Shown piece by piece: positions 19,426-44,554 of a stretch of 64,000 bases of DNA. Location of the stretch: contig CM074513.1 of NCBI GenBank assembly GCA_037379345.1, positions 26,102,001 to 26,166,000 on the forward strand, written 5' to 3'. This DNA is from Perna viridis (taxonomy: Eukaryota). The position numbers and the translations under genes were made by a program. Each line of letters begins with the position of its first letter. Positions within the stretch are counted from its first letter, which is position 1. A model generated the notes under the pieces. That model was not told where the DNA came from. It saw only the letters and a program-made list of their open reading frames with translations, and did not search any database.

Positions 19426-20042
19426 AATCTTAATTTTGGGATGCCTTATGGACAATGTCAAACAACACTACTCTTCTGTGACATCAAGCAAAGCTCCAAG
19501 TCACTTCCTAAGAATGAAGGCATTTGTCAATTAAAATGTATCCAAGTGTTTTTTTTTAAAACATTAGAATAACAACCAGCTTCTCTTCTTTTGTTGATTA
19601 TCCTCACATTGGCTATGACTTCTCTGTGGTGATTCTGTTCTCTGAAAGTATATCCACATTTCAATGTTTTATGCTTCTTTCATTTCTTAAATTCAGTAAA
19701 TAAATTGAAAATGCCATTTTAAAAAGTTAATTTCTTAAAATCATGCCTAAAACATTTTTTCCTAAATGAAGTCTAAAAGCCTTATGTCCCTCTATGTCAC
19801 ATAAATTTCTTTTTCAAAATCAATTGTTTAATTAGGATGGATTGAAAAGCAGCTTCATTTCTGGTGTTTTATGCAATAAGTACTAGTGCATGCATAGAAA
19901 CATGCACCCCACCATGTGAATGTAGACTATCTTGAATCTAAATTGATGTTTATTGATTTGGTTTCTGTCTTAGGATGTCAATGTAGAAACTGATATTGAT
20001 TGAAACTTTTTTCTGGTAAGTTAGAACAAATACACGCAAGAT

Positions 20043-24658: not shown

Positions 24659-24792
24659 AAATAAATCATGAAAACTCCATTTTATAATTGTTTTACCACA
24701 GGCTGGCCATTTACGTCATTATTTAAAACAATGCAACATAAATGGCCACCTATGGTAAAACAATGATAAAATGGAATTTCTATGATTTATTT
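24659..24792. repeat. Foldback hairpin / palindromic MITE (about 55-bp arms)
   Basis: AAATAAATCATGAAAACTCCATTTTATAATTGTTTTACCACAGGCTGGCCATTTA pairs with TAAATGGCCACCTATGGTAAAACAATGATAAAATGGAATTTCTATGATTTATTT. Confidence 0.8.
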
Positions 24793-25353
24793 GTTAAATA
24801 ACCAATTACAAACTTTTAGTAAGCAAAATATCCTAGAAAGAATATATATTTTGCTTGGAACACTGTTATCTAATGAAACTCCATATGTAACAAGACAGGA
24901 CAGAATTACACAAAAATTTGTAGGTGTAAAATTCATCAGATGTGAAGATGTCAGAATACTATAATTTTCTAATATAACATTATAACTTGCAAACAAATTT
25001 AGACATAAAACTTTCAGTGAAACTGAATACAAAATCCCCGAACTGTATCTTTTTATATACAGAAAGATGCTCACATCATTACCAACTAAAATAACCATAT
25101 TACCAGTAATTTTTCATACAGTAGTACACATTTTTTATGATAATATTAGCTAACAAATAAATATAATGTGTTTGAATGTCAAAAAAGCAGGAAACAATGC
25201 AACTGATCAATGCCATTAACAGAAAACATGGGGTAACATTTTCAAAATTGGAATGTTAAAAAATATGCAAGGAAAGATCCATTCTAAAAAAATGCTCTGA
25301 TCTGATTCTAACAGTAACTATGACTACTGGTAGCCATGGAAACGTCATGCAGG

Positions 25354-28300
25354 TCATACCCATTCTTTGCTAGGGAACACTCTGGTCACTGCCATTTCCT
25401 GTGAGGTTGGGGGTCTTTTTAGACTCTGTGACTGAAATGAATAAAGTGAATAGTGACTTTTTCAGATCCAATTTCACACTGAAGTTCCATCTTTTATTAC
25501 ATAGCAAATAATTCATTGAGATATTCATTTTTCTGTATGCAGATTTTACTGAATATCATTAGTGATTAAAGCATTAACAAGAAATTGTATAAACTGCATT
25601 AAAAAGTATCTGAACAATGTATTTACTGTTATAGAAATTAAACAATTAAATGGTGCACTACTACTGAATTAAAAAGTAAACTTTTATCAAATTTTTTCAC
25701 AAAAAAGCCAATTTTAACCAGCAATTTAAATAAAAAGCTATTTCAACGTTAAGAGGTTAAGGCTTATATATTTCAATAACAATCAAACTTCTGGGTACCA
25801 AAACAACTTATTTCTTAGTTGGAAATAATGTGTGTATGAAATGTTGGAGAATCTAAGGGATAAATTTGCAGAAGGTAATACTAAAAAGGCTGCAAGCTCT
25901 TTCTTATACACTGAAGCAATGTAAAATGATGATGCTAGCATGGAAAGTTTCTTCAAACTGAAAACTAAAAACACTCATATTTTCAAGATAAGTATTGACT
26001 CATAACACTTCAAAAAGGTTAACACACCATGAAAGCTATGAGGCACACTAGTCACTCTCTTAAAGAAACCAACCTCCCTCATAAATGTGATAAATTGTCT
26101 TCAATGTTAAAATTAGAAAGTAAAGAAATATGGGGGCCAGTTTTTGGTATACAGAGAATATGACACCATGCTACAGCTATGTAATACTGGTACATTTCAA
26201 AGAGGAAAAGTGAGGTTAAAGATTTGTCTATTATATTCTTCTTATTAAGAGCAAATGTGTAATATTAAAATACATTATAATGTGTTCAATATGCAATATT
26301 TCAAAAAATAGGTACACAACTTCAACCAAAATGTATAATGAATCAAATATTACATCGTGCAAAACTGTACTAAAACATGTGAGCAAAATTGATGTAAACT
26401 GGGAAATTTTCAAAAATACACACCCCTTTTTTTAAATTTTTTTCTTAATGTACTTTACTTTTGTTATAATATGCAATGCAATTTTAATACAACAAACCTT
26501 AATATACATGCATACTGTACTTTTATTGAAGAGAATTGATGTTGATAGACCAATTACCCAGTTTACAAATCCCTGCTTGCAATTATCTCCCTTTTACAGA
26601 GTTATCTTTCCTTTACAGCAGATTTATTAAAAATGTCTTCAGACAATATCACATCTTCATTTTACTTAGTATCTTACATGATACAAAATGTATTATGTTA
26701 GACTTTCCAGGCTATGTATCTTTTTTAGAATAAAAATAAATTTGCCTTTCTTTTTATAATGATATAACCTGCAAAAATGAATCTTAACCTGCTAAAATGA
26801 AAGACAACTCTGCAAATTGGAGATTACACAAAATTCCTCAAAATGGGAATTCTGATGATCAAGGTTTCTATACCTCAAACCATTGACTCATATAAGTATT
26901 TCCTTTTGGTTGCTCGCTGGAAGTCATCATCCTAATGTAAAGTTTGAATGTTTCAGAATTGTAAGTTAGATCTAATAAAAGGATTGAACAATCCACTTAA
27001 TGTCCCTTTGAACCTGGACTCTAAAGTAAATCTTAACTTGTACTGGAATTAGAACCTATCATTAATAGTTGCTGGGTCATCTATACTACTGTACATGTAG
27101 GGCAAAGATATATACTCAATTCAGGCTCTGTTTGATATGAAACACTTTGTTAAGCAACAAAGAGCACTGTAATTAAATTATGAAAGATAGACAAAAGGAT
27201 GGAATGTGAAGGGAATGTACCAGTATGCTCCTATAAGACATACATGATATTTAATCCATAATTAATGATTGGAAATTGGTATCATAAACCATAAGCCATA
27301 CATCCACCTAGAGAAAAAGGTTTGGATTGAAAAGGTATGTTCATAGCTGTTTTTCGGTACATATACCAGTATATTTCTCATACAAACCTTCCTAAATTAT
27401 AGAGATGGGCATGAAATGTACAAAAATATGACAAATCAGATAAAGTCATTGACACTGAAGAATCATAGATCTTACACTTGGAAATATACCAATAGTGTGC
27501 AATAAAATTAGAAAAAAAAGCCTTTCCAATTGTATTCTAGGCAAAAGTTCAACATACTAACTTACAGTGGCTTGGCCAAGGCCAAATCAATGTGGAAAGC
27601 CTTTCATAGCACAGAAAAGGGGGAGCAATTATTTTGGATGGTTTCTATTACAAGTATGTTGAAGCCTTGGCTTCTTGAAATACATTGTAGCTACACCACT
27701 GACTTACCATATAAACTGAAATATTAGTTGATCCCCCTTAAAGTTTTAGAAGTAAATTTTCAACTGCCCAGAATGATACTGACCTACATCCTTGTATGAA
27801 TCCTTGATCATATGACTATTTTAAATGTTTAAAAAATCGTATAAGAATATTTGTTCATGGATTTCAAGTTTTTGTGATTTTTGTGGTTTGTTAAAACCAT
27901 GAAATATTCATTGTTAATTTGACAGATACATAGTCTGTGTAAGTTAAATAAAATCCATGATTTTTTTTTACCTAGGAAGTGATTTAACCATACAAAATTT
28001 CCCCCAAACCAGATATTATACCCATGAATAAAAGTTCTTCAACAAAAAGTAAAAGTTTTTACTTTGAATTTCTGTTTACAACAAATACATGTATATATAA
28101 TAAGAATACATTGTTACAAAAAGAAATGTGTGTTAAAATTCATGAAACAAAATAAAAAAAAAAAAAAATGAAGATTAATGTCATAAGATTCATGAAGTTA
28201 TGACAAAGCACTCATGAATTTATGACAAAACACTCATTTCAATAAAAGATAAAAGAGTATACAGTACATTGAGTTACCCTAGATTGATTGCAAATATTGA

Positions 28301-31300
28301 TTAGTGGTTGCTAAGTCAAAACCTTTAGAAATCTTAAAAAAAAACCTATTTTACTCCTAGCAACCTTATAATATGATAAGGATTAACATTTGTGGAGCTA
28401 GTCATGAACACTAGTGATGTTAAGGATTTGTTCTAAAACATTCACAAGAAACTGAGTTCAGGTGAAGAAACATAACAATTTACGGTAAACTAAGAATTTT
28501 TCGAATGAATGGAGCTAGGCATCATTAGGGCAATAATATGTGTCTGTTTAGTATACGGCTGGTTATAGATAACTATTGAAAACACTTGATTAACATAAAA
28601 TGATGGTGACCAATGGTTTATTTGCATTTCAAGTAAAGTTTGCTTAAAAACATGTCTTTCCCCAGTAATTTAGCCGAACTGACAACGGATTTTACTATAC
28701 TCAAATATATTATTTTGAAAAGCATAATATGGTGACCCTTAACTGGGCTGAAAGAGTAAGAAATAAACCAAGTCAGGTCATTTTACTGAACTTGTGAACT
28801 TTATAATGAAAAAGGGAATAAATTCTTTTAGCCAAGAGTATCTTAATGCTAAAAATATTACAAAACTCTACCATTTTAAACAGAGGACAAAGTCCTTGTA
28901 ACAGTAATCTATACCTATTCATTCTATGACAGAGGGACCGATTTCAGTCAGACAGGTAGTGATTTGATTTCAGTCAGATAGGCAGTGATATGTAGGGCAA
29001 ATACTAATCAGAACTACTGATGCCTATCTCCTTACATAAAAATCTTGTGAAAATGGCCAAGTAGTTCCAAGTGTGCAAAAATATTGGATACTAGTCCCGC
29101 AGACAAGTCGTCCCTATTCTACTAGGACCTGGGAAGGCTAGGATGACATCAAAGTTAAGATAAGTGACACATCTATTGATAAGGCCTCTCTAGCTTTCTC
29201 CTCTAACAGTATATACCTGCCTCATATTACAATACTAGATAATTAGGGAGGGGATTAACAAGCACCTACTCCTACTGAAAATCACTAAATACTAACATCT
29301 TCAAAATGAATAAGAGCTAGCCTAAAAAATCCAAATGTTTATCTCGTAAAATATTGGAACTTAATGTTATCTTAATTTCAGAATATAAAAGCTGTCTTGC
29401 AAATACATATATTATCATATTTTCTGTAATTGTCCTTCAAACACACCAAACTTAAAACAAATAAAAAAAAAACAGGAATCTCTTGATTTGTTCTTACATA
29501 TGTAATTATGCAGTTGGGTTCTTTATTGTGAAAAAGAAAAGAAAACTCAATAAAAATCAATTTTGAGCTTGAAATCTACATCAAAACATTATATGTCTTA
29601 ACAAACAGATTTAAACTTGAAAACCTCTCCTTTCAACACAAAATACGATCCTTGCTTGACTTCAAACTTTTACTGATGAGAAAAGAAAGCTTGATGATAA
29701 AATAAAAGTTTCTTTCTCCTCAATAAAAAAGGCAATATCTTAACAATTAAAATGGCCCATAAATTATAAATGATATGGGTGACAATATTTACAGATTAAC
29801 AGGTATTGATCATATCTGCAATCCATCTAAGGTTAGAAAAAAAGATTTACCCACTATTAAATGGCAGTTTCACTCATAATCTGTAGAGAAAGATAAAACC
29901 ATGCTTTAGTTGGAGAGACAAGCAAAGAAAGGGAAACTAATGGGAAAACACAAAAATCTGGATTTTTCATGCAAATCAAATATTGATTTTTTTTCATTCT
30001 AATTCTTGGGTTCTACCTAAAATCAATTGTACTTTTCACCAAAAATATCTATAAATATATACCGAAGAGGAAATGGCTTCTTTGGATTGATAGAAACAAT
30101 TAACATGACAAGAAGCATGCTTGTATTAATTTAGAAAAAATACACATATACATATTAGCCAGGAAGCTTCACAAGCTAATATCAACTTAAGATTCAAACC
30201 TCTTAACTTAATAAGTTTGGTTTGTGGTATTTAAAGACAATACAAAGACATACTCCTACAACAAGGACAAAATCAATGGACTCCAAATGACAAAATGTAA
30301 TATACAAATATATCTATATACTTTGAACTCTGAAGTTATAATGTACTGCTACTTGACACCCTTGTCCTATCATTATTATTTATATTAAATAGCCATACTG
30401 CTATGTTTAGAAGCCTTGTAAGCAATCACTTTGCACAGCTTTATATAAATACATGGCTTTTTAATTACCTTCATCATGATCTTTTTGGGTTCCTAGTTCA
30501 ATATTGTTCTAAAACATTTATAATTATATCGTGGAAAATGCATGCAATTTCAAAGCGTACAAAGATAAGAATACGAATAAAATTAAATCAATTGAGTGTC
30601 AGTGAAATTGGGAAATAAAATTAAGACAGTTTGATGAAAGGTAAAAGGGTCAAACATTCCAGGTACTAAAAGATCAATTTTCAAAGTGACACAAGTTTGA
30701 TGCTACAACTTGTCCAATCCTGAAGTGGCATGCATATTTTAGATGTCACCAGTTAAGATTTAGACCTACAAAAATTGTTGTATCAAGATTTCCAGTCAGT
30801 TAATGAAGAATTATCATGTACTTGTATCATAGAACATATAGTTCTAGTTCTTTTCCTCAAAAATATAAAGAGTAGATAAAAAAAAAAGTAAAATAACTAC
30901 AATAACTTAATAATCCTTAATTTAGCACCTGTAAATACACAGTATCCCTGGCACTTTGCTTTTGGACCAATAAGCATTTCATTTGCACCAATTTTTAGAC
31001 TAGGACTTTTGATTAGGTAAGACATATCAAACACTCACACACATAAAAATGAAGAAAACAGCACTTAGGGTTTTAATTCTATGACATGTACAGTCAATAT
31101 AAATTTTATTCTGTTGGGATTCCATGTTTTATGTTTGTGCCACTTCCTTTTGCTGGTCTGGATTATGGTTTTGGCTTTTTAACAACTGAACTGTGGTTTT
31201 GTTTTCCGTGTCAGTTGTTAACCTTGCTTTTGCAAGACTTTTTGAAGCATATAGACTGTAGTGTCCATATTGACACTGTGATTGAGTACTACAGTTAAAC

Positions 31301-34300
31301 CTGTCTATAGTAACCTTTCAAGGGCCACTGATTAAAAGGTCACTATAGGCAGAGGATCTTTTTACAGAGGTAATTGAGATTTTCAGAACAAAATATATTT
31401 CCTTGTGTAGAGTATTGAAAACATGGGTTGTGTCATTCCATATACATCATTTTTGATATGCTGTTTTGTTTGTTGCATTTACACATCCTGTCTTTTTCTA
31501 TTACATTTTATAAGTAAATGTAGTTTTTAAGTACTTTAATAAATGAATAAGCAATTTCATTATTTAAAAATCAATATTTCCAAAGTTTACATATTCGATT
31601 CTATCTTTAAAAAAAAATGTCTACATATTGATTGAAAATGGATGTTTTTCCTGTGAGTTTTGTTAAAAATTATCTTCATTTTATAATAATTTATCCGGCA
31701 GCATTGTCCCCAGAGTCATTTGACACCTTGAGTATTTGTTGGTTCTGAATCTGTGGTTTGCTGATACCAAATAATTCTGCAATTTTCTATGCAGTGTATC
31801 TAATGTTGGAGAAGCCATTTTTTCGAAGAAGATTTTCCTTAGCAATTATGTGAATAGTATTCATCTTATGAATGAAGATTACATTTTACTCAATTTTTCC
31901 AATGGTTAAATCTGAATCTCATTCTTGAAGAATTTGAGAATTGTTTCATAACTGGCGTTAATCTGGTTTCATACGAAATCTCTTTCGATCAAGATTGAAA
32001 AATGTCAACTTTTGGTTTCGTCCAAGCAATGAAAAAGTCGCTCTATTCAGGTTTTCCATGGCTGTTAGTCACGTTTTAAGGTCACTACAGGCAGGAAGTC
32101 ACTCTAGGAAGGGGGTCACTAGTACAGGTTTGACTGTATTTGATTTAAATATTGGTTCAACAAGGGCTACAGCTGACTAAGCTATCCATTGAGATATCCA
32201 TTATGTGACTATCATTCATTGTAAAATGACACATTATTTTTTGGTGCAAAAGAAATGTTCCATAGGGGAAAATTACAGACCATAATTTCTCATAATTGGT
32301 GTAAATATAATATACCTAATATGCCAAAAGCTTTGTTCCACTCCCAATAAAAATAAATTATCTCCCCTACTTTAAATAATACTGCAAGTTTGCAGTAATT
32401 ATTGATTAACTAATACACACTTAACATGCAATAGTAATACCCTCCTCCCAGGGTATGACATTCAAGGTTGTCCTATTGCCCGGGACAAGTGAAACATCCA
32501 TTTGGACAAGTAAAAGTTATATTCAGGGGCGTAGCTAGGCCTGTTTTAGTTGAACGCAAAATTACGGTGAGGGGTCTTGAGGGGGGAGGTCGCTCAAGGC
32601 CCCCAGTGAGTCCGGCAAGGCAAAGCTCTGAGGGAAACTTCTGAATTTTAACGATTTTGGAGCCAGTTTTTCAGAGCCTATACTACGTTCATGGTATGCA
32701 TATGTAATAAATAACCTTTATTTCATCTTTAAAATGTGTGTTTTTACTTTTGTTACTTTTTCCGAAAGTACGCAACTGCGTATTTGCGTATAGGCAGCTA
32801 CGCCCGATATTAAACTTGCCCTTGGGACATCCAAATTCATTCATTTTTTAACATTCATTTTACTAAAGGACAACCTAAATTTTCATCAACTTTCCCCATA
32901 GGACAAGGTTATTAAAATGTTAATGTCATACCCTGCCTCCTTCCAGAACAAAATAATTGTTGAAATTTATACAAATATATCAATCTGTTTGCGAACTTTG
33001 ACAATATCAATAAATTAGTCAGAAATAAGGTAAAGCTTGTTAAGCATTTTCATGTAGTAGAAGGGGGGATAAGCAAATACCCTTGGTTTATTGGAAGCCA
33101 TGGTTAAAACCTTTACCCCCATTTTTACCCACCTGTAACCATGACATTAACCCTCTGACCTTTGAACTAAATTTTGGTCCACAAGCCTTAAATACCTAAA
33201 ATCTATAAAAACCTCTATCCTAAAAGATGAGTTCATATTTAAATAAAACATACCAGTGATATTTGAGTAGTTGGTAAGTTCTGCTTCATTACTGTCACCC
33301 ATTTATCAGTCTCATTTGGATCATCACACTGAAACAACAAAGAATATTTTGATGCAAGACTGGTGCCCTGCTGGATATTTTCTGTTCTCACTGATATTTA
33401 ATAGTGTGAAGGTATTTTTATTTGTAAGTGTCAATTTTTATGGTTGCAATTTTCTGACTTAGATGATTTTGGAATTTGTAGATTTCAATAGAGTTTTTAA
33501 GGAAAATATATACTTTTTTCAAGATTATGAATTCCTTGTTAAACCAAACAGAGAAAACAACATTAAAAAGGCACACCACAAAGAATGGTTCTTTAGCAAT
33601 TTTTTATATGTTATCTTAATTTACAGCTACATAAACAAACCAATGAAAAACTTTGGTTTAGAGATTTCGTCATTCCTTATTCATCTTTATCACTTACTGG
33701 AAGTGATAAGGACATTTCTTCCCCTAGTTGCAAGCTGAAATCAGGGCTGATAACTGGTCATTGGTCCATTGTCAACAGCTATGTCATTGATATCAGCCCA
33801 TTGTTAATGGTAATGTCATTAGTAATGAAAGTAGCATTCTAATTAGAAAATGAATTATTTGTTTATAACTGAAGAAACTACCCTCTAATATGACTAGATA
33901 TAGTCATCTGCAGTTTTTTTTGTAATGATTCAAATATGTGATAAAAAGATTATGACAATAATAATATATTAGTAATGTAAAATTGGATGTTTCATACATA
34001 CAGGTATATCTTTATCATTTCCTTATTGTACAATCAAAACAATACGTCAAACTGATTACTGTGAAGATATTACTGTTAATGGGGTACCAAATTTTGTGGA
34101 TTTCATGGGTTATATAAACCACGAAATTAGGTTCCCAAAGAAAAGGAAATTTCCATTTGTTTGTATGATTGAGTTGTCAATTCCAGGAATTCAAGAATCA
34201 ACGAACTGATCCTTTTCCCCTAAACCAAGAAAATTGGTACCCACAAATAAAAGCACTTTCACGGTTGTATTGTGAAAGTTCTTTTATTTGTAGGTACCAA

Positions 34301-37300
34301 TTTTCATGCATTAGTGCAGAAACACAAGTTTGTGGATTTTCGAATTCGTGGTTTTGAGGTTTTCAGTTTACATATCAATGGAAATTTCATTTTCATTGGA
34401 AACCAAATTTTGTGGCTTTTCCTACCCATGAAAACCATGAAAATGTGTATCCCACAAACAATAGTACTTTCTCATTATGCCTCTGAAGGAAACTAAATGG
34501 TAGAGAAGTCCAAAATATAAATTAAGAATATGATATACATGTATTTTGTGCCAAATTATTTTTTGGAAGATGGTGGAAATGGGGATTCTTGCACATAAAT
34601 TTTCCCAATTTGACTAATCAGCAGACACATAGGAAGCTGAAAAATTGCAGGTAGTATTTGTCTCATATCCATGCCCACTAATTGTATGTAGAGGCAACTA
34701 TTTAAAAAAAACCTTTACTTGTGTTAGCTGTTTTATAAGTAAGTTATGAGTTTTCAGTATAATATATATTATGTTTAAAAAACGGTATTACACATTAAAC
34801 TTATAAATTGTGAACATCTGTCTCATGCGTCATAATGATTCTAAAATTTAATTGTCAACAAAAGTCTTAACCTGAAGTGTGATGGATAGACAAATAGACA
34901 CAAGACAGATGTCAGTTTATCCTAATGGTTTTATGGGGCAGGTATAAAAAAGAGCTTCTTTTTTTCAACAAAAGAAACTATTTGTTTTCAGCTGCACCAA
35001 AGCAGTGCACATATGTATATAATATCATTCCAAACCTGTATGTAGAATGTCCTTTTAGCAGTCACAATTTCAAATAGGTTATCTCTACTCTGGTGTCTAC
35101 AATTCAAAGCATTTTATTAAAGTTTAAGCAAGTTTATGAACTTGCAAAATGAAAAGAAACTTACAAAATATTACTCAAAAGTTCCCTTAAATTCATTTAA
35201 TTTTTTGTCAGATTTAACCTAATGTAAATCAGGAAATTTTCGTGCAGTATTTTTTTTCACAGTTTCGGCTATAAATCTGTTTAATTTTATGTGTTACGGA
35301 TCTCGGCCAGAATATAGAGAAAATAAGACTGCTGCAAAAATTTCATGGCTTACAGTATTCAATAAATATGATTAAAAAACATGATTAATCAGTTTGTTCC
35401 TTAACTGAAACAGGGATCTTCAGTGGATATTCAGTAATCAAAAAGGAAACTTCACAATTTCCCTTGTTTATCAGCATATAATTTTTTCAACTGTTTAATA
35501 AAGCAACTTATAGTACACTTTTCAAGAAGAAAATAAGTGATTATAGGCTATAGCGAACCTGAATGCCTCAAGTGGAATAAAAAAAATTTGCAGTGTCAAT
35601 GTCAATGAAGAAAAAAAATTACCTAATATCTGGATTTCTAAGATACTAGTTATTTCACAACACTGATTTTTTAATTGAACCTTTTAGTACATTGAGTAGA
35701 TCTTAATTCAGTTTCCTCTGGATATATACATGTATGTCTTTGTTTTAAGGGTTGAATGAATCACACTTCAAGAACAAAATATCAAAACAAATTGAAACAA
35801 GAAAAAAAATTATTGTCAAACTGAAGTTGGACTCTCACGAACTCATAAATTATGAGTGTATTTTTACTTTGTATCTGTATAAATAACTAATGATAAAAAG
35901 GTTTTCATTTTTATCTTTTTTAAAGAAATAAATACAAGGCTAAAAAAAAAAGCTACGTTTTCAGGCCCAGCCGCAACCTCCCGCATCTGCGATTTTTATA
36001 ACGGTAATATCCAGAAATTTCACATCCGTTCCGGAAATTTTGATATTCAGTCCGAAATCAACTTTTAATTAGTTAATTAGTTAATGGATTCATCTCTGTG
36101 CTTAACAGAAAGGTAAAAAATACAATGCAAATGAGGCTGTTCTTTAACATTGATCATTAAAAAAATAAAAATAAAAATTATTTATCTTGTCAACATCCTG
36201 TACATTTGGTAATTGTTCAATTCGATGAAATTTCACGAAAAAAAAAAGAACTTGCTTCTGATATAAGAAAAAAAAAATAAGCCTCCCATATTATTTTTTC
36301 AAGTCACCTGGCCAAAGGCCACATGAGCTATTGCCATCACTTGGCATCCTTCGTTGTCTTCCGTCGTTGTTAACAATTATACAAAACTCTTCTCCTCTGA
36401 AACTACTTGACTGATTAGAACCAAACTTGGTATAAATGTTCATTGGGTTATCCTGCATAGAAATGATGTGGGGATTTTTGATTCGTCGAAAAACATGGCA
36501 GCCGATACTAAAAATAGAACATAAGGGGTCAGACAGCAGATTTTTGCATATGTTACAAAATCCGTGAGGGTTTGCTAAATTTTGACGGGATAAAAGTGTT
36601 CAGCATGGTGAGAGCTATCTCTGGTCAAATTTTGGTTTTAATCCATTAAGCCATTTTGGAGTTATTGCCCTTTTTCTACAATTTTTGCTATTTTTAATGG
36701 GTTTTTTTTCAAAAATCTTCTCCTCTGACACTACTTGACCAATTGAAATTAAACTTAAAATGAATGTTCCTTGGGGTAGCCTGCATAGAACTGATGTGGG
36801 GATTTTTGATTCATCAAAAAACATGGCCACCATTACTAAAAATAGAACATAGCGGTCAGACAGTAGTTTTTTCGCATATATCTCCAAAACTGTTAGGTTT
36901 AGCCAAATTCTTCCAATAGCTGAAATGATCCTTCTTATAAGGACTACAAAAGTCTTCAGGGATAAAGTTGTCAGATGACTCTCTGTAAGAGTTATTGCCC
37001 TTGAAAGGGGAAAAATGACTTTTTTGATAGTTTTCAGTCAATGTCTTGAAAACTATGATAGATTAAAAGAAACTTTCAATTGTTGAAATGATCCATATGA
37101 AAAGCTCTACCAAAGACTTCTTGAAAGGCAAAATTCAACCAGGTGGGCGATTCAGGCTCCTGGGAGCCTCTTGTTTTAATAAGTGGCCTGAGAATCTAGC
37201 CATTTTTTTATACGGCCTAAAGCATACTTACACTGATTTACGGACATCAATTATTTCACATTTTGGTAATGTTCTTAATGGCTCTTTTGCCTGAAAAATA

Positions 37301-40300
37301 CATATGATTTAATTCCTTTGTATATGTGGGAAATAACTCTTTCATGTGAAATCTGTAGCAGATTCATTCAATTTTAAAGCTAGAAAAAGATTAGCTTAAC
37401 TAAGCTAATATTCTGCTAGTATTCAAGCAAAACCATTTTTCACCAAGTTCAAAAATGATTTTTTAATACTTAAAATTGTATGAAATTATATGTAAATCAT
37501 TCAACACAACACTGTTTTTTTATATAGAAATCAAGCCAGGTCAATACAACCTCTATAAAGTTTACAATGTACACAACTTGTATCCTACCATCACACAAAT
37601 TTGAAAAAAATGTTATACTGAGTTCAGTATAAGTCTAGCTAGGCTTCTGAATGATTTTAAAATACCAGGAGCTATTTGAATCACTTAGTAGCCTAGCTAG
37701 AGTTGCATTGAAATCAGGATTACTTTTCAAAGTGGCATCACTTTGATTCAGGAATGTTAGCTTACCAAGTTCCTCTACATTTTACAAACAGTCCCTGCTT
37801 GTTATATGATCTAATGATGTATACAGAGCAATGTAAACTTTGAAGTCAATACAGAAAGTAACACAATGAGAGTGATTAAACAAAAAACCATGTTTCTTCT
37901 GAAACATTCAAATTCAAAACTGACATTACTAAATTAATCTGAAAAGAATCTGATATTACAGAAAACTGTCAATGAAAACAGAGACCATTTTTCAGTATCC
38001 AGTAAAATAGCCCGAAATTTACCAAGTAATAAGTAAGAACAATATAAAAATCTTAAAGTTGCCAATAAACAATTAATTCATACTCTATCTGAACTGTAAT
38101 ACTGTAGTCCATTTTCAGAAAAGACAAAAAATCTTCTCTTCCAATTCTTTCTCTGAAATGCCAAATCAGATCATACATTCAATACATTGGTTCCCATACT
38201 ATCAAGATTCCTTTTTTTTCAAAGATATTTTAAAACATCAACAGAACCTATTTTCATTAATACAGCTAGTTGAAATAGACCAGTTCCAATTTCAATACAA
38301 AAATCTACAAATTGTTAAAGTATCTATAACTCTGGTTATCATTTTGGCTGTATATCAAGTTACATTTATCAAATGATGAAACTCAAAAGATTCCATTCTC
38401 ATAAAAATTAGACTTTTGTATTTTTACATTTAGCGGTTTTAAAAATCAACAATATGCTAAAGACCTGCCAAGATAACTTCTTGGTTCTCAAGTCATATAT
38501 ATATATACATATATATATTATACCATTTTATTGCCTCAAATAAGTGATGAGGAAGCTTTTACATTGTTCATAGGTGAAAAAAAAATGATAAAGAAGACCT
38601 TTTTCGTAATCATTTTAATGATATGACAATAAAAATAGATAATGGAACACCCTCAGAGGAGATGAAGGAGGACCACTTTTGAGGAAAATATTGTTGCTCG
38701 GTTATAATATTACGGTTAAAAAAAATGCAGAAACAGAAAGCTGATGACAAGGCATCAGACCGGGAGACGGAATCAATTGACACTGTGTCTTCTTCCCTGC
38801 AAACATAGAAATATACATAAAAATATCAGATAACAAAATTGCATTTATATATCTTACGATTTGGGACTTGACAAAACATGGTTCGGGCTTAGTGTACAAA
38901 AGATGAAGAATTCCAGGGCTCGGGTCTTCAAAAATAAATTTTCAACCCCTGAGTAATTAACTTTAAGAGGCCTGATGACTGTTTCACTTACCATACCACC
39001 TTGTTTGACACAAAAACCACTGATGTAAGACTGCATATCATTGGCTGCTATGCCTGAAGACTCATCTGGACTATCTGAGCCTGAAGCCTCTTCTTCACTG
39101 GTCTGAAAAAATCGAGTCAATTATAAAGGCATGCCTAAAAAAAATGAATACCTGATGACTGAAGTTTAGAAATAATGCTATTTTAATATTAATTAACAGA
39201 ATCATGTATCTTACTTCCTTGATACTTTTGTTTGGTTAAATTTCTTCATCAAGTTAAACAATGGAACAGGTAGTTTATAAAGACTACTGGAAGTTTATCA
39301 TTTGATGTAAATAAAACTATTACGAAAAATCCGTCCAAGTAAAACAGTATAAAACATCAAACTTGACTTCTACCTTTAGAATAAGAAATTTTTTTACTCC
39401 ATGTGGCATTACAACAGGTCACAAAAATCGCACACACACACACACACACAAATGAAATGAATACTGGACACTAAAAATATTAACATCTTATTCAATAAAC
39501 CAAATGTAAGTAAAACAACACCAAGAATACTTAAATAGCACACACACACACTCAGGAAAGACAAGATAAACTATTTAATTCAACAAGCACCTAGAGGTTA
39601 CTATGGCTGTGATCAGCAAGTGCTTTAGGTGACTTTTAACATTCAAATGGTTCTAAAAACACCAGCAATATAAAGTTAACATGTATAAAACCAAAAATTT
39701 CTAAATGGTAATGAGTAAGGCACATTTGATCTGGGTCTTTAAATTATCTCCCTTTTTCTGTTGATATAGAATAGTTTATATTTAAGTTTTATTTTCATTA
39801 ATCATGCTTAAGATCTGAATATAACAGCTACACTTTGCACGCTATAATACATTCTAAAATGTTATTCTACAAAAAATGAATTTCCATGTTTTCACTTGCC
39901 TGATATCTATAATGACTAATACCTTATTGTTCTTTGCATGTTCAGCGAAAACTAAATGTTATTTTCAATGACTTAAGCAGTAAAACTTGTTATCTTATTG
40001 CATGGACTTATAATTTTAATGTAACTACACACAACAGTCAAAGAACCAATATGTCATATTCTAAATATAAAAAGCCACTAATGCTTGTCACATCAAACAA
40101 CAAAACCCCTTACCTGAATCTTACTGTACTATAAAACATTATGCATACAACAGATAAAACAAGTTCTAATTAAATTGTACTATGTGTCTTGTTGCCAAAA
40201 TAAAAAAAAAAAACAACTTCATAATTGCTGGAAAAAAATACATTTGTTTGCTTTAAACTGAAAAGCAAATCTACGTCAATACCTAATATTTTTTAATGAT

Positions 40301-43300
40301 CAAGAAAAATATGCATAACAGTTTGTTTGACAATGTTCCTTTTTTATTACATAATGTACACCACAAAGAAAGAAACAAGAATGTTGATCAAAGTAAATAG
40401 ATTGTACAAAAGAACAAGGTAGCTTTTAATATAATGATATACTGTTTAATTATCAATCTCCTTATGCATGTATATTTAATTCAATATTTTCTTTAAAAAG
40501 CTGAATATTGGACTGTTAATCATACCTGTCTATATCTATCATAGCATGTAACATGGAAAGTAAAAAGAAAGGTACACTGTTTGAGTTACTGACTTCAAAT
40601 TATTACATACTATACTGAAGTATAATTGCGTAAGGTTTTCCATATTGGCTTACTTATTGGTCCAAGGCTAGCCATATTGAACAAGCATATCTGAAGTCCA
40701 ATATGACTGCATGAGGACCAATAACTCAGCCAATATGGAAAACCTTACACAATTATACCTTAATTGACTAACCAGTCCAACACCTCCTATTGACCTTGGC
40801 CAATATTGATTTTAAGCAGGCCAATTTGATGTATTGGATAGGTAAAACCTGTATTGTATGGCTAAATCCTGTACTGGCACACTTTTGTATTTTGTATTGT
40901 ATAGGTAGTTTTGATCATATATAGGCTAAAATTTGAATATTAGTCAATAAAATCTTTTTCCAGAGTAATCAAGGGAAACCAGATTCAAGCAGAAATCAAA
41001 AGAATATATCCAAGGATAAAGACTAGACAGGAAAAATAGACACACACAACATTGAACATGAAATAACCAAAATAACATGTACAAAGAAACAAAAGAAAAA
41101 CAAAAGAGCAATTTTAAAAATTCATGGTAACTCAATAACAATTTCTTAGTATGCATTGCAAGAAATATCTTTCCTTTCAAATTTTTTGACATCTTCAAAA
41201 ATTGTACCATACAAATTCCTAAATACAATAGAGGTATATTTTATATTCAGTAATTAAGTTTAGCTAAATTAAAATGAGCCGCACCAGCAAATCATCATGC
41301 AGCTTTTTAAAATTTGAGTAAAAACATAACTTACAAACAAGCCAGTTATGGATTCATGTAAAAGACAACCAATTATGCCTATAATTCAAAAATAATATTG
41401 GTACACAATATTTTTATTTACCTTCATGGGTATCTTACAAACAACACCACCAGCAATCTCAGCAGTAAATCCTGTTTTAGAATCTTTTCTGGTTGGTCCA
41501 TCTCTTGAATCATGTTCTGGAATCTGAAAAAAACCAATGAAATCTTGTTTAAGTTCAGTATCATTGGTTGCTGGACAGTGTTTACTTAAGGAGTCTACAT
41601 TTTTGTAACTGCTCAATTAATATTTCCATGTCTTTCCTTATTTATACAAACAAATTCCAAATTCACAAGTATTTCCATTGTATTATATTACATGTATACC
41701 AAAAATATTACAACAAAACATGTCTCTACTGTCTGAAAACCTTACTAAACTAACAATATTCAAAAACATATGGCATAGTGTTGTTAAACACAACTTGGAA
41801 GCTTTTTTGAACTAAGATTTCTTGTTTGAACTTGTACTTTCTATATTACATCACACTACTTACAATTCTCCTCAAATAAAAAAAAAAAGAACAAAAAACT
41901 AACTGTTATTTTACTGGCATCATTTAATGCCTTTATCCATCCATCCAAATCATCTGCATCCTCAGCTTCCAAAAACAAGGAACGGCCTGCATATGTTATA
42001 GCTGTAATTGTAATAAAATATCAAAACATACAAAATAGTGTTCAATCTAAACATTTATCACATATCCATTAATACTGATAACAGGGACACAGCTAGAAAC
42101 TGAGGGTCAATCTCAAAAACAAAATATATCATATCACAGATATAATGGTAGACAAGGAGTCAACAGACATAGGATGAGGCTTATCAGAAGATCTGACATG
42201 TAAAGCAATTTCAAGTCAAATATGCACTTTTAAAAACAAATCCTATTGCCAAAAATATTACTTGACATCAGGTAGTCCAAGAAGGAACTCCAAAAAGAAA
42301 CTTTTGTGTATATTTTACAGGCTAAAACGGAATACAAAAATATACATATTGCTACTGGAAAATGAAACCAAATCATTTTACACATCATGATGCCAACAAA
42401 ATCTGGCATTGGTGAAATCCATAGTAAAAATTCCCCTAAATATCATTACATTAAAATGTACAGTAAAATAATAGGACTTCAGATTTTAACTCTGAACAAA
42501 ATAAAATTAACTTTGATTCTATGTGATACTTACAGAAGCAGTTGTCCACCTTTGGTCGTAGCTTCCTGGCATCACTAACCTACATCATTAAACAACAATT
42601 CATCTATAGACTATCCATCAAATAGTTCGACACTTAAAGTCAACAACAATAAAAATGTAACATACAAAAATTTGTAATGAAAAATATACGTACAATGCAC
42701 ATGAAATTCAGACATATTAGACATTAATTATCTGATAATTATATGTATATTTCTATATTGGAAGAATAAGCTTTCTTAAGTACATGTATATGAAATGCCA
42801 ATCTCCAGTTTTTGTTGTTGAAAGTTCCATAAAGCAGAAATAAAAAAAATGAAGGCACCATGTTTCTAAATAAAATACTTAAAGCTGCATTAGCTGCCAA
42901 ATTTGTTCAGTTTTGATTCTATTGAATTTTGCTGATTCAATGAAATAAGTTTGTAGTAATGCAATTGAAGCAATAAATGTTGACAATACAGAATAACAAT
43001 GTTTTTTTAATCAGAGAAGATCCATAGCCCTGCTCTAATTATTTTTTGCCTTTACTTCTGAAGATTACCGACAGGACATTCACCTGGGTTAAAAATACTT
43101 TCACCTTGGTAAAAAAATAACAATAACGAATACACAGGTAAGCACATGTCTTGTTTTCATTTCATTTATCTATTTCTTGATTAGTTTTCAAATAGATAAT
43201 GACCATATTTGTGCCACGTTATATCAAAATACGTAAATTTCAAAAGGATCCTTGCGTTATATTCCAATTTTTTTTCTTTTATGGCTTGAGACTGTCTGTC

Positions 43301-44554
43301 TTCCTTGCCGTTGAATAACCACTTTTGCTTTGCAATCAGATTTGTTATTAAAGAAGCAACCCTTACAGCACATGTGTGGATTAAGGTCACCAGAAGTCCC
43401 ATGCATACGAATTTATCTAGGTCAATTTTTTGTCTTGTAAGACAATAAATATTTAGACACCTATTTCATGTATTTAATGCATTTTATTTGTGGATATCAA
43501 ATGAAATTATGCAGGAAAAGTACAATTTAGTGGAAATAATTCAAAGTTAAGACATATTTCAACAGAAACAAAAATTTACAAAAATGACAGCTAATGCAGC
43601 TTTAAATCTTTCAACATGTTTTAAAGTCATGATATGACATTTAACTTAATGCATTGATAATTGAATGGTTAGATACCATTTTACCATAATTGATTTGTTC
43701 AAAGTCCATAACAATGATAAAAAAGTATTTAAGAGTTTTGTAAAATAATTGCTGCTTTCTTCATAATTACAGAGAAATTTATACAACCTTTGATATAAAA
43801 TGTATCTCTATTTCTCCACTATGTTGTCTGTAGTCAGCATGGAGATTCTGAAATAAACATTGAGATCAATAAAACAGATGAACAAAAAACAGTTTAAATA
43901 AATAACTGTAAGTCAAAGATAAGTGAGAAACACTTTAATTAGACAACATCAGTCACAGTTCTGACATACATCTTCTCTTCTAATCTTCGTGTTATTTTTT
44001 AAAATTCTAAGTCTCATATTGGATGACTTTATAAGAACCATAGATGATTCCTAATTAATTTAGAGGTCACAACAAGTACAACATGTAAACCTATAAAAAA
44101 TTATTTACTCATTCTATTATCAAGTTTCATCAAATTCAGATTTTAAATATGTCCCATTCACACTATCATTCTACAAAATGTGCGATTAATACAAAATGAC
44201 ATTTCTAATGCATCAGTTCAATCTAAAAGCCTACTTCATACAGACAAATGCTGCTTGCTAGTTACTAGTATTAAATTCTTATAAATTATAGCTACATGTA
44301 CATGTAAATAATAAAATTAAGAAGAACCTGAAAGTCAAGTTGGATTTACATGAGCTGTAAACTGAAAATCTGAAATTAATCTACCAGAATGCCACAAAAT
44401 GTAAAATTCTAACCTCAGGGTTATCTTTATAATAGTATAATCTACTATGTTTCTGGTCTAATAGGAAGTACCGTCTGAGGAACTTTCCACTTTGTTCTTT
44501 TTCTTCAGCATTTAAAAATCCACATATTCTTCCATACTTATCTTTATAAGGCAT
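25354..44554 (-). CDS. PLEKHA1: Tandem PH domain-containing protein (TAPP1/TAPP2, PLEKHA1/2 homologue); exact 3' exon chain uncertain
   Basis: Minus-strand GT-AG exons in phase: 44554-44414 (MPYKDKYGRICGFLNAEEKEQSGKFLRRYFLLD..DNPE), 43847-43788, 42579-42534 (VSDARKLRPK), 42001-41904, 41523-41422 (AEIAGGV), 39102-38992 (GFCVKQGGM), 38152-38084 (RKNWKRRFF), 37290-37232 (KEPLRTLP), 35096-35036 (RDNLFEIVT..RTFYIQ), 33328-33254; 274 aa, closely following human TAPP1 as remembered. Candidate terminal exons: 30508-30469, 29880-29851, 27715-27708, 27600-27566, 26931-26874, 25431-25354. Confidence 0.9.
31292..32136. mobile_element. Non-autonomous Tc1/mariner (pogo/Tigger-like) DNA element, 845 bp
   Basis: Imperfect TIRs CAGTTAAACCTGTCTATAGTAACC / GGTCACTAGTACAGGTTTGACTG flanked by TA on both sides; no transposase ORF in the track. 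Confidence 0.75.
32449..32935. mobile_element. hAT-like MITE containing a nested second MITE (about 32524-32806)
   Basis: Perfect 14-bp TIRs CAGGGTATGACATT / AATGTCATACCCTG; 8-bp TSD CCTCCTCC / CCTCCTTC. The inner element has CAGGGGCGTAGCT...AGCTACGCCCG ends with ATATT on both flanks. Confidence 0.8.
34057..34477. mobile_element. Two adjacent, oppositely oriented copies of an about 200-bp TACTGTGAA-type MITE
   Basis: Copy 1 at 34057-34265 and copy 2 at about 34268-34477; both share GGTACCAATTTT and the ATGGAAAT.TC core with 58501-58694 and about 50617-50821. Confidence 0.75.
35938..37217. mobile_element. Harbinger-like MITE interrupted by a HINE insertion
   Basis: Left GGCTAAAAAAAAAAGCTACGTTTTCAGGCC and right GGCCTGAGAATCTAGCCATTTTTTTATACGGCC are imperfect inverted repeats; CAA/TAA flanks. 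Confidence 0.55.
36296..37175 (+). mobile_element. Helentron-associated interspersed element (HINE) with 328-bp internal tandem repeats
   Basis: T-rich target; subterminal IR GTCACCTG (36303) / CAGGTGGGC (37140); 5' GGCCAAAGGCC stem; GTC-like microsatellite; 3' palindrome AGGCTCC-TG-GGAGCCT then CTTGTTT; TCTTCTCCTCTGA repeats at 36388 and 36716. Confidence 0.85.
39431..39450. repeat. (CA)10 microsatellite
   Basis: Perfect CA run; a shorter run is near 39540. Confidence 0.95.
40620..40758. repeat. Foldback hairpin / palindromic MITE (about 60-bp arms)
   Basis: GTATAATTGCGTAAGGTTTTCCATATTGGCT.A.TTATTGGTCC pairs with GGACCAATAACTCAGCCAATATGGAAAACCTTACACAATTATAC. Confidence 0.88.
42883..43601. 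mobile_element. Kolobok-like non-autonomous DNA transposon, 719 bp
   Basis: Perfect 14-bp TIRs AGCTGCATTAGCTG / CAGCTAATGCAGCT; TTAA at 42879-42882 and 43602-43605; AG...CT termini. Confidence 0.82.

What the first reader, a model, noticed from the sequence alone, without database searches (positions are those of the whole stretch)
25354..33254. Candidate micro-exon switchboard giving the TAPP homologue alternative PDZ-ligand C-termini
Seen: after the second PH domain (exon ending 33254, phase 0) are six small minus-strand segments bounded by splice signals: A 30508-30469 (40 nt, NNIELGTQKDHDE+G), B 29880-29851 (30 nt), C 27715-27708 (8 nt), D 27600-27566 (35 nt), E 26931-26874 (58 nt) and terminal F from 25431. 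Phase-consistent products: B alone gives IMSETAI*; E alone or A+C+E gives (..DHDEVYM)DDDFQRATKRKYLYESMV*; A+C+D+E+F is fully open and ends ..RVFPSKEWV*; A+B gives ..DEDYE*; A+F gives ..GSDQSVP*. ETAI and ESMV both fit the class I PDZ ligand E-S/T-x-V/I, and each stop sits within a few nt of a donor. Established: vertebrate TAPP1 uses a C-terminal PDZ ligand to bind scaffolds. Inference: splicing chooses which PDZ scaffold this phosphoinositide sensor recruits, or none. Some of these segments may be chance splice-like sites.
Basis: partly seen in the sequence, partly recalled or inferred. Interest (0 to 1): 0.75.

Follow-up and report, generated by a model that had tools for sequence, protein, structure and literature searches.

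The report
Mussel TAPP gene's alternative protein tails
A mussel lipid-sensing adaptor gene (TAPP/PLEKHA1-2 type) really does end in several alternative ways, two of them looking like docking tags for PDZ scaffold proteins, but only four of the six proposed small exons are real.

Summary
The gene is a minus-strand mytilid TAPP (PLEKHA1/2) orthologue, with coding exons from 44554 to 33254.

**Exons backed by RNA contigs of two runs:**
- Splices 33254|30508 (into A), 30469|25431 (A to F), 30469|29880 (A to B) and 33254|25431 (A skipped).
- Contigs that read through the F donor, giving KEWV*.

**Exons backed by relatives:**
- B alone (IMSETAI*) and E (..KRKYLYESMV*) showed no junction of their own in the four runs.
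- Their tails recur in relatives' isoforms: MSETAI* in Mytilus and another mytilid..KRKFVYASMV*..RRYVYESMI* and ..RLYMYETMI* in Mytilus, scallop and oysters.
- Motifs built from the relatives hit the window once each, at these places.

**Not supported:** C and D. D lies inside a dispersed repeat with at least 40 copies.

**Verdict:** this is a real, conserved set of alternative last exons plus one frame-shifting cassette, giving about six C-termini. Two fit the class I PDZ ligand pattern; binding itself is inferred. Splicing of human PLEKHA1 with or without its PDZ ligand is already published (PMC10140001), so this is a new variant of a known kind.

The parts
33254..33328 (-). Last exon of the second PH domain (CDDPNETDKWVTVMKQNLPTTQISL). 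It ends in phase 0 and is the common donor for all tails.
   Evidence: Its last 29 letters are the loose ends joined to 30508 and 25431.
30469..30508 (-). Exon A: a 40-nt frame-shifting cassette (NNIELGTQKDHDE plus 1 nt).
   Evidence: Junctions 33254|30508 (X1, X13), 30469|25431 (X1, X13) and 30469|29880 (X1). Translation. Single copy. 13-aa counterparts at the same place in mytilid isoforms (TKLTGPNGEAIED, TKLTGHLKDISED).
29857..29880 (-). Coding part of exon B. In phase 0 it reads IMSETAI*. After A it reads D-Y-E-stop.
   Evidence: Acceptor used in X1, and an X13 contig starts at 29880. Translation. MSETAI* isoforms P0286, P0295, P0301. Motif unique in the window, 0 matches in 200 shuffles. 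14 of 18 pyrimidines before the CAG.
26874..26931 (-). Exon E. In phase 0 it reads DDDFQRATKRKYLYESMV*.
   Evidence: Translation. Single copy. Counterparts ..KRKFVYASMV* (Mytilus)..KKRRYVYESMI* (Pecten maximus)..RLYMYETMI* (oysters). Motif unique in the window, 0 matches in 200 shuffles. No RNA junction in the four runs.
25360..25431 (-). Exon F in its internal form, 72 nt. Frame 0 reads SQSLKRPPTSQEMAVTRVFPSKEW. Frame +1, used after A, reads TESKKTPNLTGNGSDQSVP*.
   Evidence: Junctions into 25431 and out of 25360. 22 of 25 residues identical to the mytilid proteins P0182 and P0168.
24780..25359 (-). Read-through extension of F. It adds V plus a stop (KEWV*) and a 3' UTR. The lower end is approximate.
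   Evidence: X13 contig of 1632 nt and X1 contig of 664 nt run unspliced past 25360. AATAAA at 24791-24786. ..WV* isoforms in mussels, scallops, oyster, octopus and other unnamed relatives.
19564..19641 (-). Coding part of the conserved last exon (RTESPQRSHSQCEDNQQKKRSWLLF*).
   Evidence: The loose end at 25360 equals 19612-19641. Translation. 19 of 25 residues identical to P0168.
33329..44554 (-). Upstream coding exons of the TAPP-like gene. Approximate positions: 44554-44414, 43847-43785, 42579-42535, 41999-41904, 41523-41425, 39102-38992, 38152-38084, 37293-37234, 35095-35036.
   Evidence: tblastn of relatives against the window. Partial PH-domain hits on exon pieces.

Best explanation
The 3' third of this mussel TAPP (PLEKHA1/2-type) gene is a region of alternative last exons plus one frame-shifting cassette. 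Together they attach one of about six different C-terminal tails to a constant tandem-PH core.

From the donor at 33254 (phase 0) the transcript can take these routes:
1. Splice to F (25431-25360) and on to the last exon at 19641, giving ..VFPSKEW-RTESPQ..KKRSWLLF*.
2. Splice to F and not use F's donor, giving ..KEWV*. An AATAAA lies about 570 nt downstream, so polyadenylation there is likely.
3. Include the 40-nt exon A, so that F is read in the +1 frame and ends ..GSDQSVP*.
4. Go from A into B, giving ..DHDEDYE*.
5. Go directly into B, giving ..IMSETAI*.
6. Go directly into E, giving ..KRKYLYESMV*.

Shown here: the junctions of routes 1 to 4, and the conservation of the tails of routes 1, 2, 5 and 6.

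Inferred:
- Routes 5 and 6 are used in this species, probably in tissues or stages not sampled.
- B and E are terminal exons with their own poly(A) sites.
- The ETAI and ESMV ends are class I PDZ ligands. On that reading the choice of tail decides whether, and to which PDZ scaffold, the phosphoinositide-bound adaptor is tethered.

C and D are chance splice-like sites at a transposable element.
For: - Junctions with GT..AG ends at the exact exon borders in contigs of two runs from two studies. The loose ends map uniquely to 33255-33283 and 19612-19641.
- The 15 listed members of the Mytilus cluster carry seven tail types: 4 long with a micro-exon, 1 long without, 1 KEWV*, 4 A-like plus frame-shifted F, 1 A-like plus B, 2 MSETAI*, 2 ..KRKFVYASMV*.
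- A 281-aa ORF ending MSETAI* from a 1129-nt contig of another mytilid (P0301).
- E-type tails in Pecten maximus X2, Magallana gigas X4 and Crassostrea virginica X7.
- Four motifs built from the relatives alone match the window once each in six frames. All are on the minus strand, in the order B, E, F, last exon. Mean matches per shuffled window were 0 for B and E, 0.63 for the F motif and 0.055 for the last-exon motif, over 200 shuffles.
- E, A and B are single copy in the 723-Mb genome.
- PDZ binding by the TAPP1 C-terminus is published. PMC10140001 describes it (passages read). PMC3162930 reports two-hybrid binding of the last 10 residues to MUPP1 PDZ10-13 (passages read).
Against: - No junction 33254|29880 or 33254|26931 was seen in the four runs, and there was no local depth above intron level over E.
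- Only two of the four runs held the gene's spliced RNA. Their tissues are unknown, and 'RNA' is the tool's guess for them.
- The NCBI isoforms of relatives are model predictions whose evidence I could not inspect.
- E aligns to relatives with weak statistics when taken alone (10 of 19, 8 of 14 and 5 of 9 identities; E-values 7.6, 0.8 and 37 in a permissive search).
- The stops of B and E are followed by GT. If those donors were used, the transcripts would be candidates for nonsense-mediated decay rather than for protein.
- PDZ binding rests on a three-residue pattern.
Confidence: 0.75

Rival explanations
1. Only the A / F / last-exon choices make protein. B and E are unproductive 'poison' exons or splicing noise. 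They bring in an early stop and lower the amount of TAPP, and their PDZ-like ends are coincidence.
For: Both stops are followed within 1-6 nt by a GT. No junction from the PH2 exon directly into B, and none into E, was seen in four runs. The A-to-B contig has the same low depth as the surrounding intron and runs on unspliced for 4.5 kb.
Against: - The last seven residues of E keep the pattern [FY]-x-Y-[AE]-[ST]-M-[VI]-stop in mussels, a scallop and oysters. That is protein-level conservation, which a mere stop-carrier does not need.
- MSETAI* is identical in three other mytilid sequences.
- Both ends keep S/T at -2 and V/I at 0 in every species seen.
Confidence: 0.15
2. One reading: all six small segments, C (8 nt) and D (35 nt) included, are combined freely, giving among others A+C+E and A+C+D+E+F.
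For: The frames work out (checked segment by segment). C and D carry the only two GTAAGT donors of the interval.
Against: - No junction at 27715/27708 or 27600/27566. The X1 contig crosses both unspliced.
- No relative's isoform holds matching residues.
- D lies inside, and C's donor at the edge of, a dispersed repeat: 27548-27705, 40 scored copies of 135 candidates, 78-87% identical.
- 1301 AG..GT pairs of 8-60 nt exist in the interval.
Confidence: 0.03
3. One constant 3' exon chain only; everything else is chance.
For: Splice-like sites are abundant in this AT-rich intron.
Against: Four different junction pairs leave or enter A, B and F, and there are two fates of F's donor, within single runs. 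The same variants occur in relatives.
Confidence: 0.02

Closest known systems
Human PLEKHA1 (TAPP1) long and short splice isoforms
   Same: Same gene family. Alternative splicing at the 3' end decides whether the tandem-PH adaptor ends in a class I PDZ ligand. PMC10140001 (passages read) describes a TAPP1-L isoform with the ligand PVSDV and partners including syntrophins and MUPP1.
   Different: The human case is described there as with or without one ligand. Here there are about six tails: two different class I-type ends on separate exons, a ..WV end made by not splicing, a basic-hydrophobic ..KKRSWLLF end, and a frame-shifting cassette.
Annotated PLEKHA1/2-like isoforms of Mytilus spp., Pecten maximus, Magallana gigas and Crassostrea virginica (NCBI models and Logan/ENA contig ORFs)
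   Same: The same tail classes at the same position after the PH2 exon: MSETAI*..Y-[AE]-[ST]-M-[VI]*..WV*..SW[LF][LW][WS]*, and A-like plus frame-shifted F.
   Different: - The window's species is a different mytilid; its closest protein here, P0182, shares 41 of 47 residues in exon 1.
- Its B begins one codon earlier (IMSETAI) and its E is 8 residues shorter than in Mytilus.
- No counterpart of the Mytilus 8-aa micro-exon GQMERQLK was found.
- These database isoforms are not discussed in any paper my searches found.
Other splice-controlled PDZ ligands (for example PMCA 'a/b' tails, NMDA receptor GluN1 C2/C2'); recalled, not checked here
   Same: A C-terminal exon choice switches a PDZ-binding end on, off, or to another type.
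   Different: Those are membrane proteins. Here a soluble lipid-binding adaptor is switched, and by several alternative last exons.

Membership tests
TAPP (PLEKHA1/PLEKHA2) tandem-PH adaptors | Orthology over the whole coding length with named PLEKHA1/2 proteins. | tested here: met
   Ten exons align colinearly with Mytilus PLEKHA1-like proteins, for example 40/46, 15/15, 28/34, 21/23 and 18/20 identities. A search of 1.84 billion representatives with exon 1 gave 153 proteins at E <= 0.001. The ones later seen with names are PLEKHA1/2.
TAPP (PLEKHA1/PLEKHA2) tandem-PH adaptors | Two PH domains, one N-terminal and one C-terminal. | tested here: inconclusive
   Exon pieces give PH or PH_8 hits, all below Pfam's cut-offs (20.6, 17.4 and 21.6 bits against 25.1-30). 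This is expected for fragments. I did not scan a joined model. The full-length relatives carry PF00169 and related families.
TAPP (PLEKHA1/PLEKHA2) tandem-PH adaptors | PI(3,4)P2-specific binding by the C-terminal PH domain. | not tested
Not examined.
Class I PDZ-binding C-terminus (x-S/T-x-hydrophobic-COOH) | S or T at position -2 and a hydrophobic residue (V, I or L) at the very C-terminus. | tested here: met
   ..E-T-A-I* and ..E-S-M-V*. Relatives have T-A-I, S-M-V, S-M-I and T-M-I. The consensus (S/T)XV is as quoted in PMC10140001. ..KEWV*..SWLLF*..DQSVP* and ..DEDYE* do not fit it.
Class I PDZ-binding C-terminus (x-S/T-x-hydrophobic-COOH) | Demonstrated binding to a PDZ domain. | not testable with these tools
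   Needs peptide or two-hybrid assays.
Alternative last exons / cassette exons | Different junctions from one donor seen in RNA of one sample. | tested here: met
   In run X1: 33254|30508, 33254|25431, 30469|25431, 30469|29880, 25360|19641 and read-through of 25360.
Alternative last exons / cassette exons | B and E have their own poly(A) sites. | tested here: inconclusive
   AATAAA lies about 330 nt after B's stop and about 250 nt after E's stop. Contigs cannot show RNA ends.

The most novel reading that the evidence does not exclude
Pteriomorph bivalves keep a multi-tail TAPP adaptor. One tandem-PH lipid sensor is given, by tissue-regulated choice among four alternative last exons and a frame-shifting cassette that makes exon F dual-coding, either of two distinct class I PDZ ligands, a ..WV end, a polybasic-hydrophobic membrane-type end, or no tag. 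The E-type S/T-M-V/I tail would be the retained ancestral bilaterian PDZ ligand of the family. The same PI(3,4)P2 signal would then be wired to different scaffolds in different cells.
Probability: 0.3. Interest if true: 0.6.

Novelty: new variant of a known kind. Interest (0 to 1): 0.45.

Why it matters
TAPP adaptors link a short-lived lipid signal, PI(3,4)P2, to PDZ scaffolds. In people, splicing that keeps or drops the PDZ ligand has been tied to cell spreading and epithelial-mesenchymal transition (PMC10140001).

A mollusc gene that offers several conserved tails on one sensor would be a natural experiment. It could show how the tail, rather than the lipid-binding core, sets where and with whom the adaptor acts.

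It also gives a clean example of two things that automatic gene models of bivalves tend to split or miss:
- a dual-frame exon;
- a stop codon placed right behind a donor, so that 'not splicing' makes a defined protein end (..WV*).

Tried and rejected
- Micro-exon search. I looked for a counterpart of the Mytilus 8-aa micro-exon (GQMERQLK) among 90 open AG..GT segments of 15-30 nt. The only look-alike, 31750-31727 (IQNQQILK), lies inside a dispersed repeat with 14 or more longer copies, so I dropped it. That place was outside the stretch laid with reads.
- Genomic loci of relatives.
- Metagenome scans for an E-type and a B-type coding pattern: 0 matches each.
- A protein search restricted to the E-type tail of P0289 found no candidate. 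This says nothing about absence.
- Runs X24 and X21 gave nothing useful. X24 had one 31-nt piece. X21 had short pieces with foreign letters on both sides, which I take for repeats of other loci.
- Contig depths are reported but not used to rank isoforms, as the tool warns.
- Literature. The search was too loose: none of its 15 listed papers holds a PLEKHA term. One search (PLEKHA1 and Mytilus) found 0 papers. One search found 4 papers, none on molluscs.
- Supplements were closed. The supplementary tables of PMC10140001 may give the human exon coordinates, which I did not see.
The window was searched exon by exon, and full-length queries were database proteins (P0048, P0182, P0289).


Full report
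**What is there.** The window is mollusc-like DNA of about 30% G+C. It comes from a 723-Mb assembly in 46 contigs. On the minus strand lies an orthologue of the tandem-PH adaptors TAPP1/TAPP2 (PLEKHA1/2).

- Exon 1 (44554-44414, MPYKDKYGRICGF..) found 153 proteins at E <= 0.001 among 1.84 billion representatives.
- tblastn of those proteins, and of Mytilus proteins, lays ten coding exons colinearly from 44554 to 33254.
- The closest protein, P0182 (an unnamed Logan contig ORF), shares 41 of 47 residues in exon 1. Mytilus PLEKHA1-like shares 40 of 46. The species is therefore a mytilid other than the annotated Mytilus.
- Exon pieces give PH-domain hits below Pfam's cut-offs, as fragments do.

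**The observation.** That alone means little, because the 7.9-kb interval has 1301 AG..GT pairs of 8-60 nt.

**RNA evidence.** No run is on record as RNA. I laid four runs, kept as Logan contigs, on 25200-31150. Two of them, X1 and X13, come from different studies and hold spliced forms with GT..AG ends exactly at predicted borders:

- 30469|25431 (A to F) in both runs.
- 30469|29880 (A to B) in X1.
- Loose ends at 30509 (X1, X13) and 25432 (X1) that are the last 29 letters of the PH2 exon, 33255-33283. These give 33254|30508 and, skipping A, 33254|25431.
- A loose end at 25360 in X1 that equals 19612-19641.

From these junctions it follows that:

- It splices to a further exon that reads RTESPQRSHSQCEDNQQKKRSWLLF*.
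- Other contigs run straight through that donor. One is an X13 contig of 1632 nt that also carries F, A and a loose end matching the PH2 exon. The other is an X1 contig of 664 nt.
- An AATAAA lies at 24791-24786, and from the contig lengths I reckon that both contigs end shortly beyond it. F is therefore both an internal and a terminal exon.
- With A included, F is read in the +1 frame and stops at ..GSDQSVP*. F is a dual-frame exon.
- An X13 contig starts exactly at 29880 and crosses the proposed donor of B unspliced. The X1 contig that begins with the A|B junction runs on unspliced for 4.5 kb through C, D and E.
- No junction was seen at C, D or E, and none from 33254 directly into B.
- Runs X24 and X21 held next to nothing of the stretch.

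**Evidence from relatives.** Searches with database proteins and cluster look-ups gave many isoforms.

Tails after ..TTQISL among the 15 listed members of the Mytilus cluster:

| Tail | Members |
|---|---|
| GQMERQ[LF]K + TQSLRR..KEW + RPESPQ..KKRSWL[WL][SW]* | 4 |
| The same without the 8-aa insert | 1 |
| ..KEWV* | 1 |
| TKLTGPNGEAIED + AESTEA..GSDPGVS* (an A-like 13-aa exon, then F in the +1 frame) | 4 |
| ..AIEDE* (A-like into B) | 1 |
| MSETAI* | 2 |
| SPNDV[SL]DDNQEQEAPVKRKFVYASMV* | 2 |

In a second, unnamed mytilid cluster (14 listed):

| Tail | Members |
|---|---|
| ..KEWV* (three of these with a 7-aa insert) | 10 |
| MSETAI* (P0301, a 281-aa ORF on a 1129-nt contig, hence from spliced RNA) | 1 |
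| Fragments | 3 |

- E-type tails also occur in Pecten maximus isoform X2 (..ACKKRRYVYESMI*), Magallana gigas X4 and Crassostrea virginica X7 (..RLYMYETMI*).
- The ..WV* end and the ..SW[LFM][LFW]x* end recur in named scallops, oysters, octopus and abalone, and in unnamed relatives.
- I saw no E-type tail in the gastropod or cephalopod clusters listed.

**Control.** I wrote four motifs from the relatives only and scanned all six frames of the 64-kb window.

- Each matched once: MSETAI* at 29877-29857, YLYESMV* at 26898-26875, VFPSKEW at 25380-25360 and KKRSWLLF* at 19590-19564.
- All are on the minus strand, in the order expected.
- Mean matches per shuffled window, over 200 block-shuffled windows, were 0 (B), 0 (E), 0.63 (F) and 0.055 (last exon).
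- Taken alone, the alignments of E are short and statistically weak: 10 of 19, 8 of 14 and 5 of 9 identities. The weight lies in the unique, positionally correct match and its recurrence in three families.

**C and D.**

- The stretch 27548-27705 is a dispersed repeat: 40 scored copies of 135 candidates, 78-87% identical.
- It contains D and its splice sites. C's donor sits at its edge.
- No relative has matching residues.
- By contrast E, A and B are single copy.

**How it most likely works.** A constant tandem-PH core receives its tail through a choice among last exons (B, E, F read-through, or F plus the exon at 19641) and through the 40-nt cassette A, which shifts the frame.

- The two tails that fit the class I PDZ pattern are ..ETAI and ..ESMV. 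The consensus (S/T)XV is as quoted in PMC10140001.
- Vertebrate TAPP1 uses such an end (..SDV) to bind MUPP1, syntrophins and others (PMC10140001, passages read). Its last ten residues bind MUPP1 PDZ10-13 and LNX in two-hybrid tests (PMC3162930, passages read).
- That the mussel tails do likewise is inference.
- The other tails (..KEWV, ..KKRSWLLF, ..DQSVP, ..DEDYE) do not fit class I. The basic-hydrophobic ..KKRSWLLF end may help membrane association, but that is my guess.
- The main rival is that B and E are unproductive stop-carrying exons. It is weakened by the protein-level conservation of E's last seven residues.

**Comparison and novelty.** Splicing of human PLEKHA1 into forms with and without the PDZ ligand is published (PMC10140001). 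The bivalve isoforms exist as database models. I found no paper on them: 0 papers hold PLEKHA1 and Mytilus, and the 4 papers holding PLEKHA1, isoform, PDZ and alternative splicing are none of them on molluscs. The finding is therefore a richer variant of a known kind, not a new kind.

**Limits.**

- Only one reads call was allowed, on contigs of four runs of unknown tissue.
- The supplements of the papers were closed.

Noticed in passing
window 27548-27705: Dispersed repeat of about 140-160 bp: 40 scored copies of 135 candidates across the genome, 78-87% identical. It carries a perfect GTAAGT that mimics a donor.
   Followed up: partly
window 31659-31794: A second dispersed repeat: 14 or more longer copies at 71-79%, plus shorter pieces. 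It holds an open 24-nt AG..GT segment (31750-31727, IQNQQILK) that resembles the Mytilus micro-exon GQMERQLK by chance or by descent. That place was not covered by the reads call.
   Followed up: partly
window 25360-25431: Exon F is dual-coding. Frame 0 is conserved across molluscs (..V[FY]P..W). The +1 frame, used after exon A, stays open to a stop at a similar place in three mytilid lineages (..GSDQSVP*, ..GSDPGVS*, ..DSNTGIS*).
   Followed up: partly
window 25354-25359: The intron after F begins GTATGA, so not splicing adds Val plus a stop. The same ..W-V-stop (or W-I-stop) end is seen in isoforms of mussels, scallops, an oyster, octopus and other unnamed relatives. This suggests the stop behind the donor is kept by selection.
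   Followed up: partly
window about 41410-41425 and 39102, between exons 5 and 6: Some relatives' isoforms carry about five extra residues here (..CKIPMKYSKIQ.. in P0182; ..KYNK.Q.. in P0289, P0286 and P0285). This points to another small alternative exon or donor. I did not look for it in the window.
   Followed up: no
window 5609-7347, minus strand: Two long open frames: 162 aa, Cys/His-rich; and 424 aa. Together they look like a separate single- or two-exon gene downstream of the TAPP gene. They were not searched against any library.
   Followed up: no
window 26583-26811: Contigs of run X21 touch here only over 21-33 letters, with foreign letters on both sides and a 'joint' carrying 27 inserted letters. 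I take this for short repeats shared with other loci, not for splicing.
   Followed up: no
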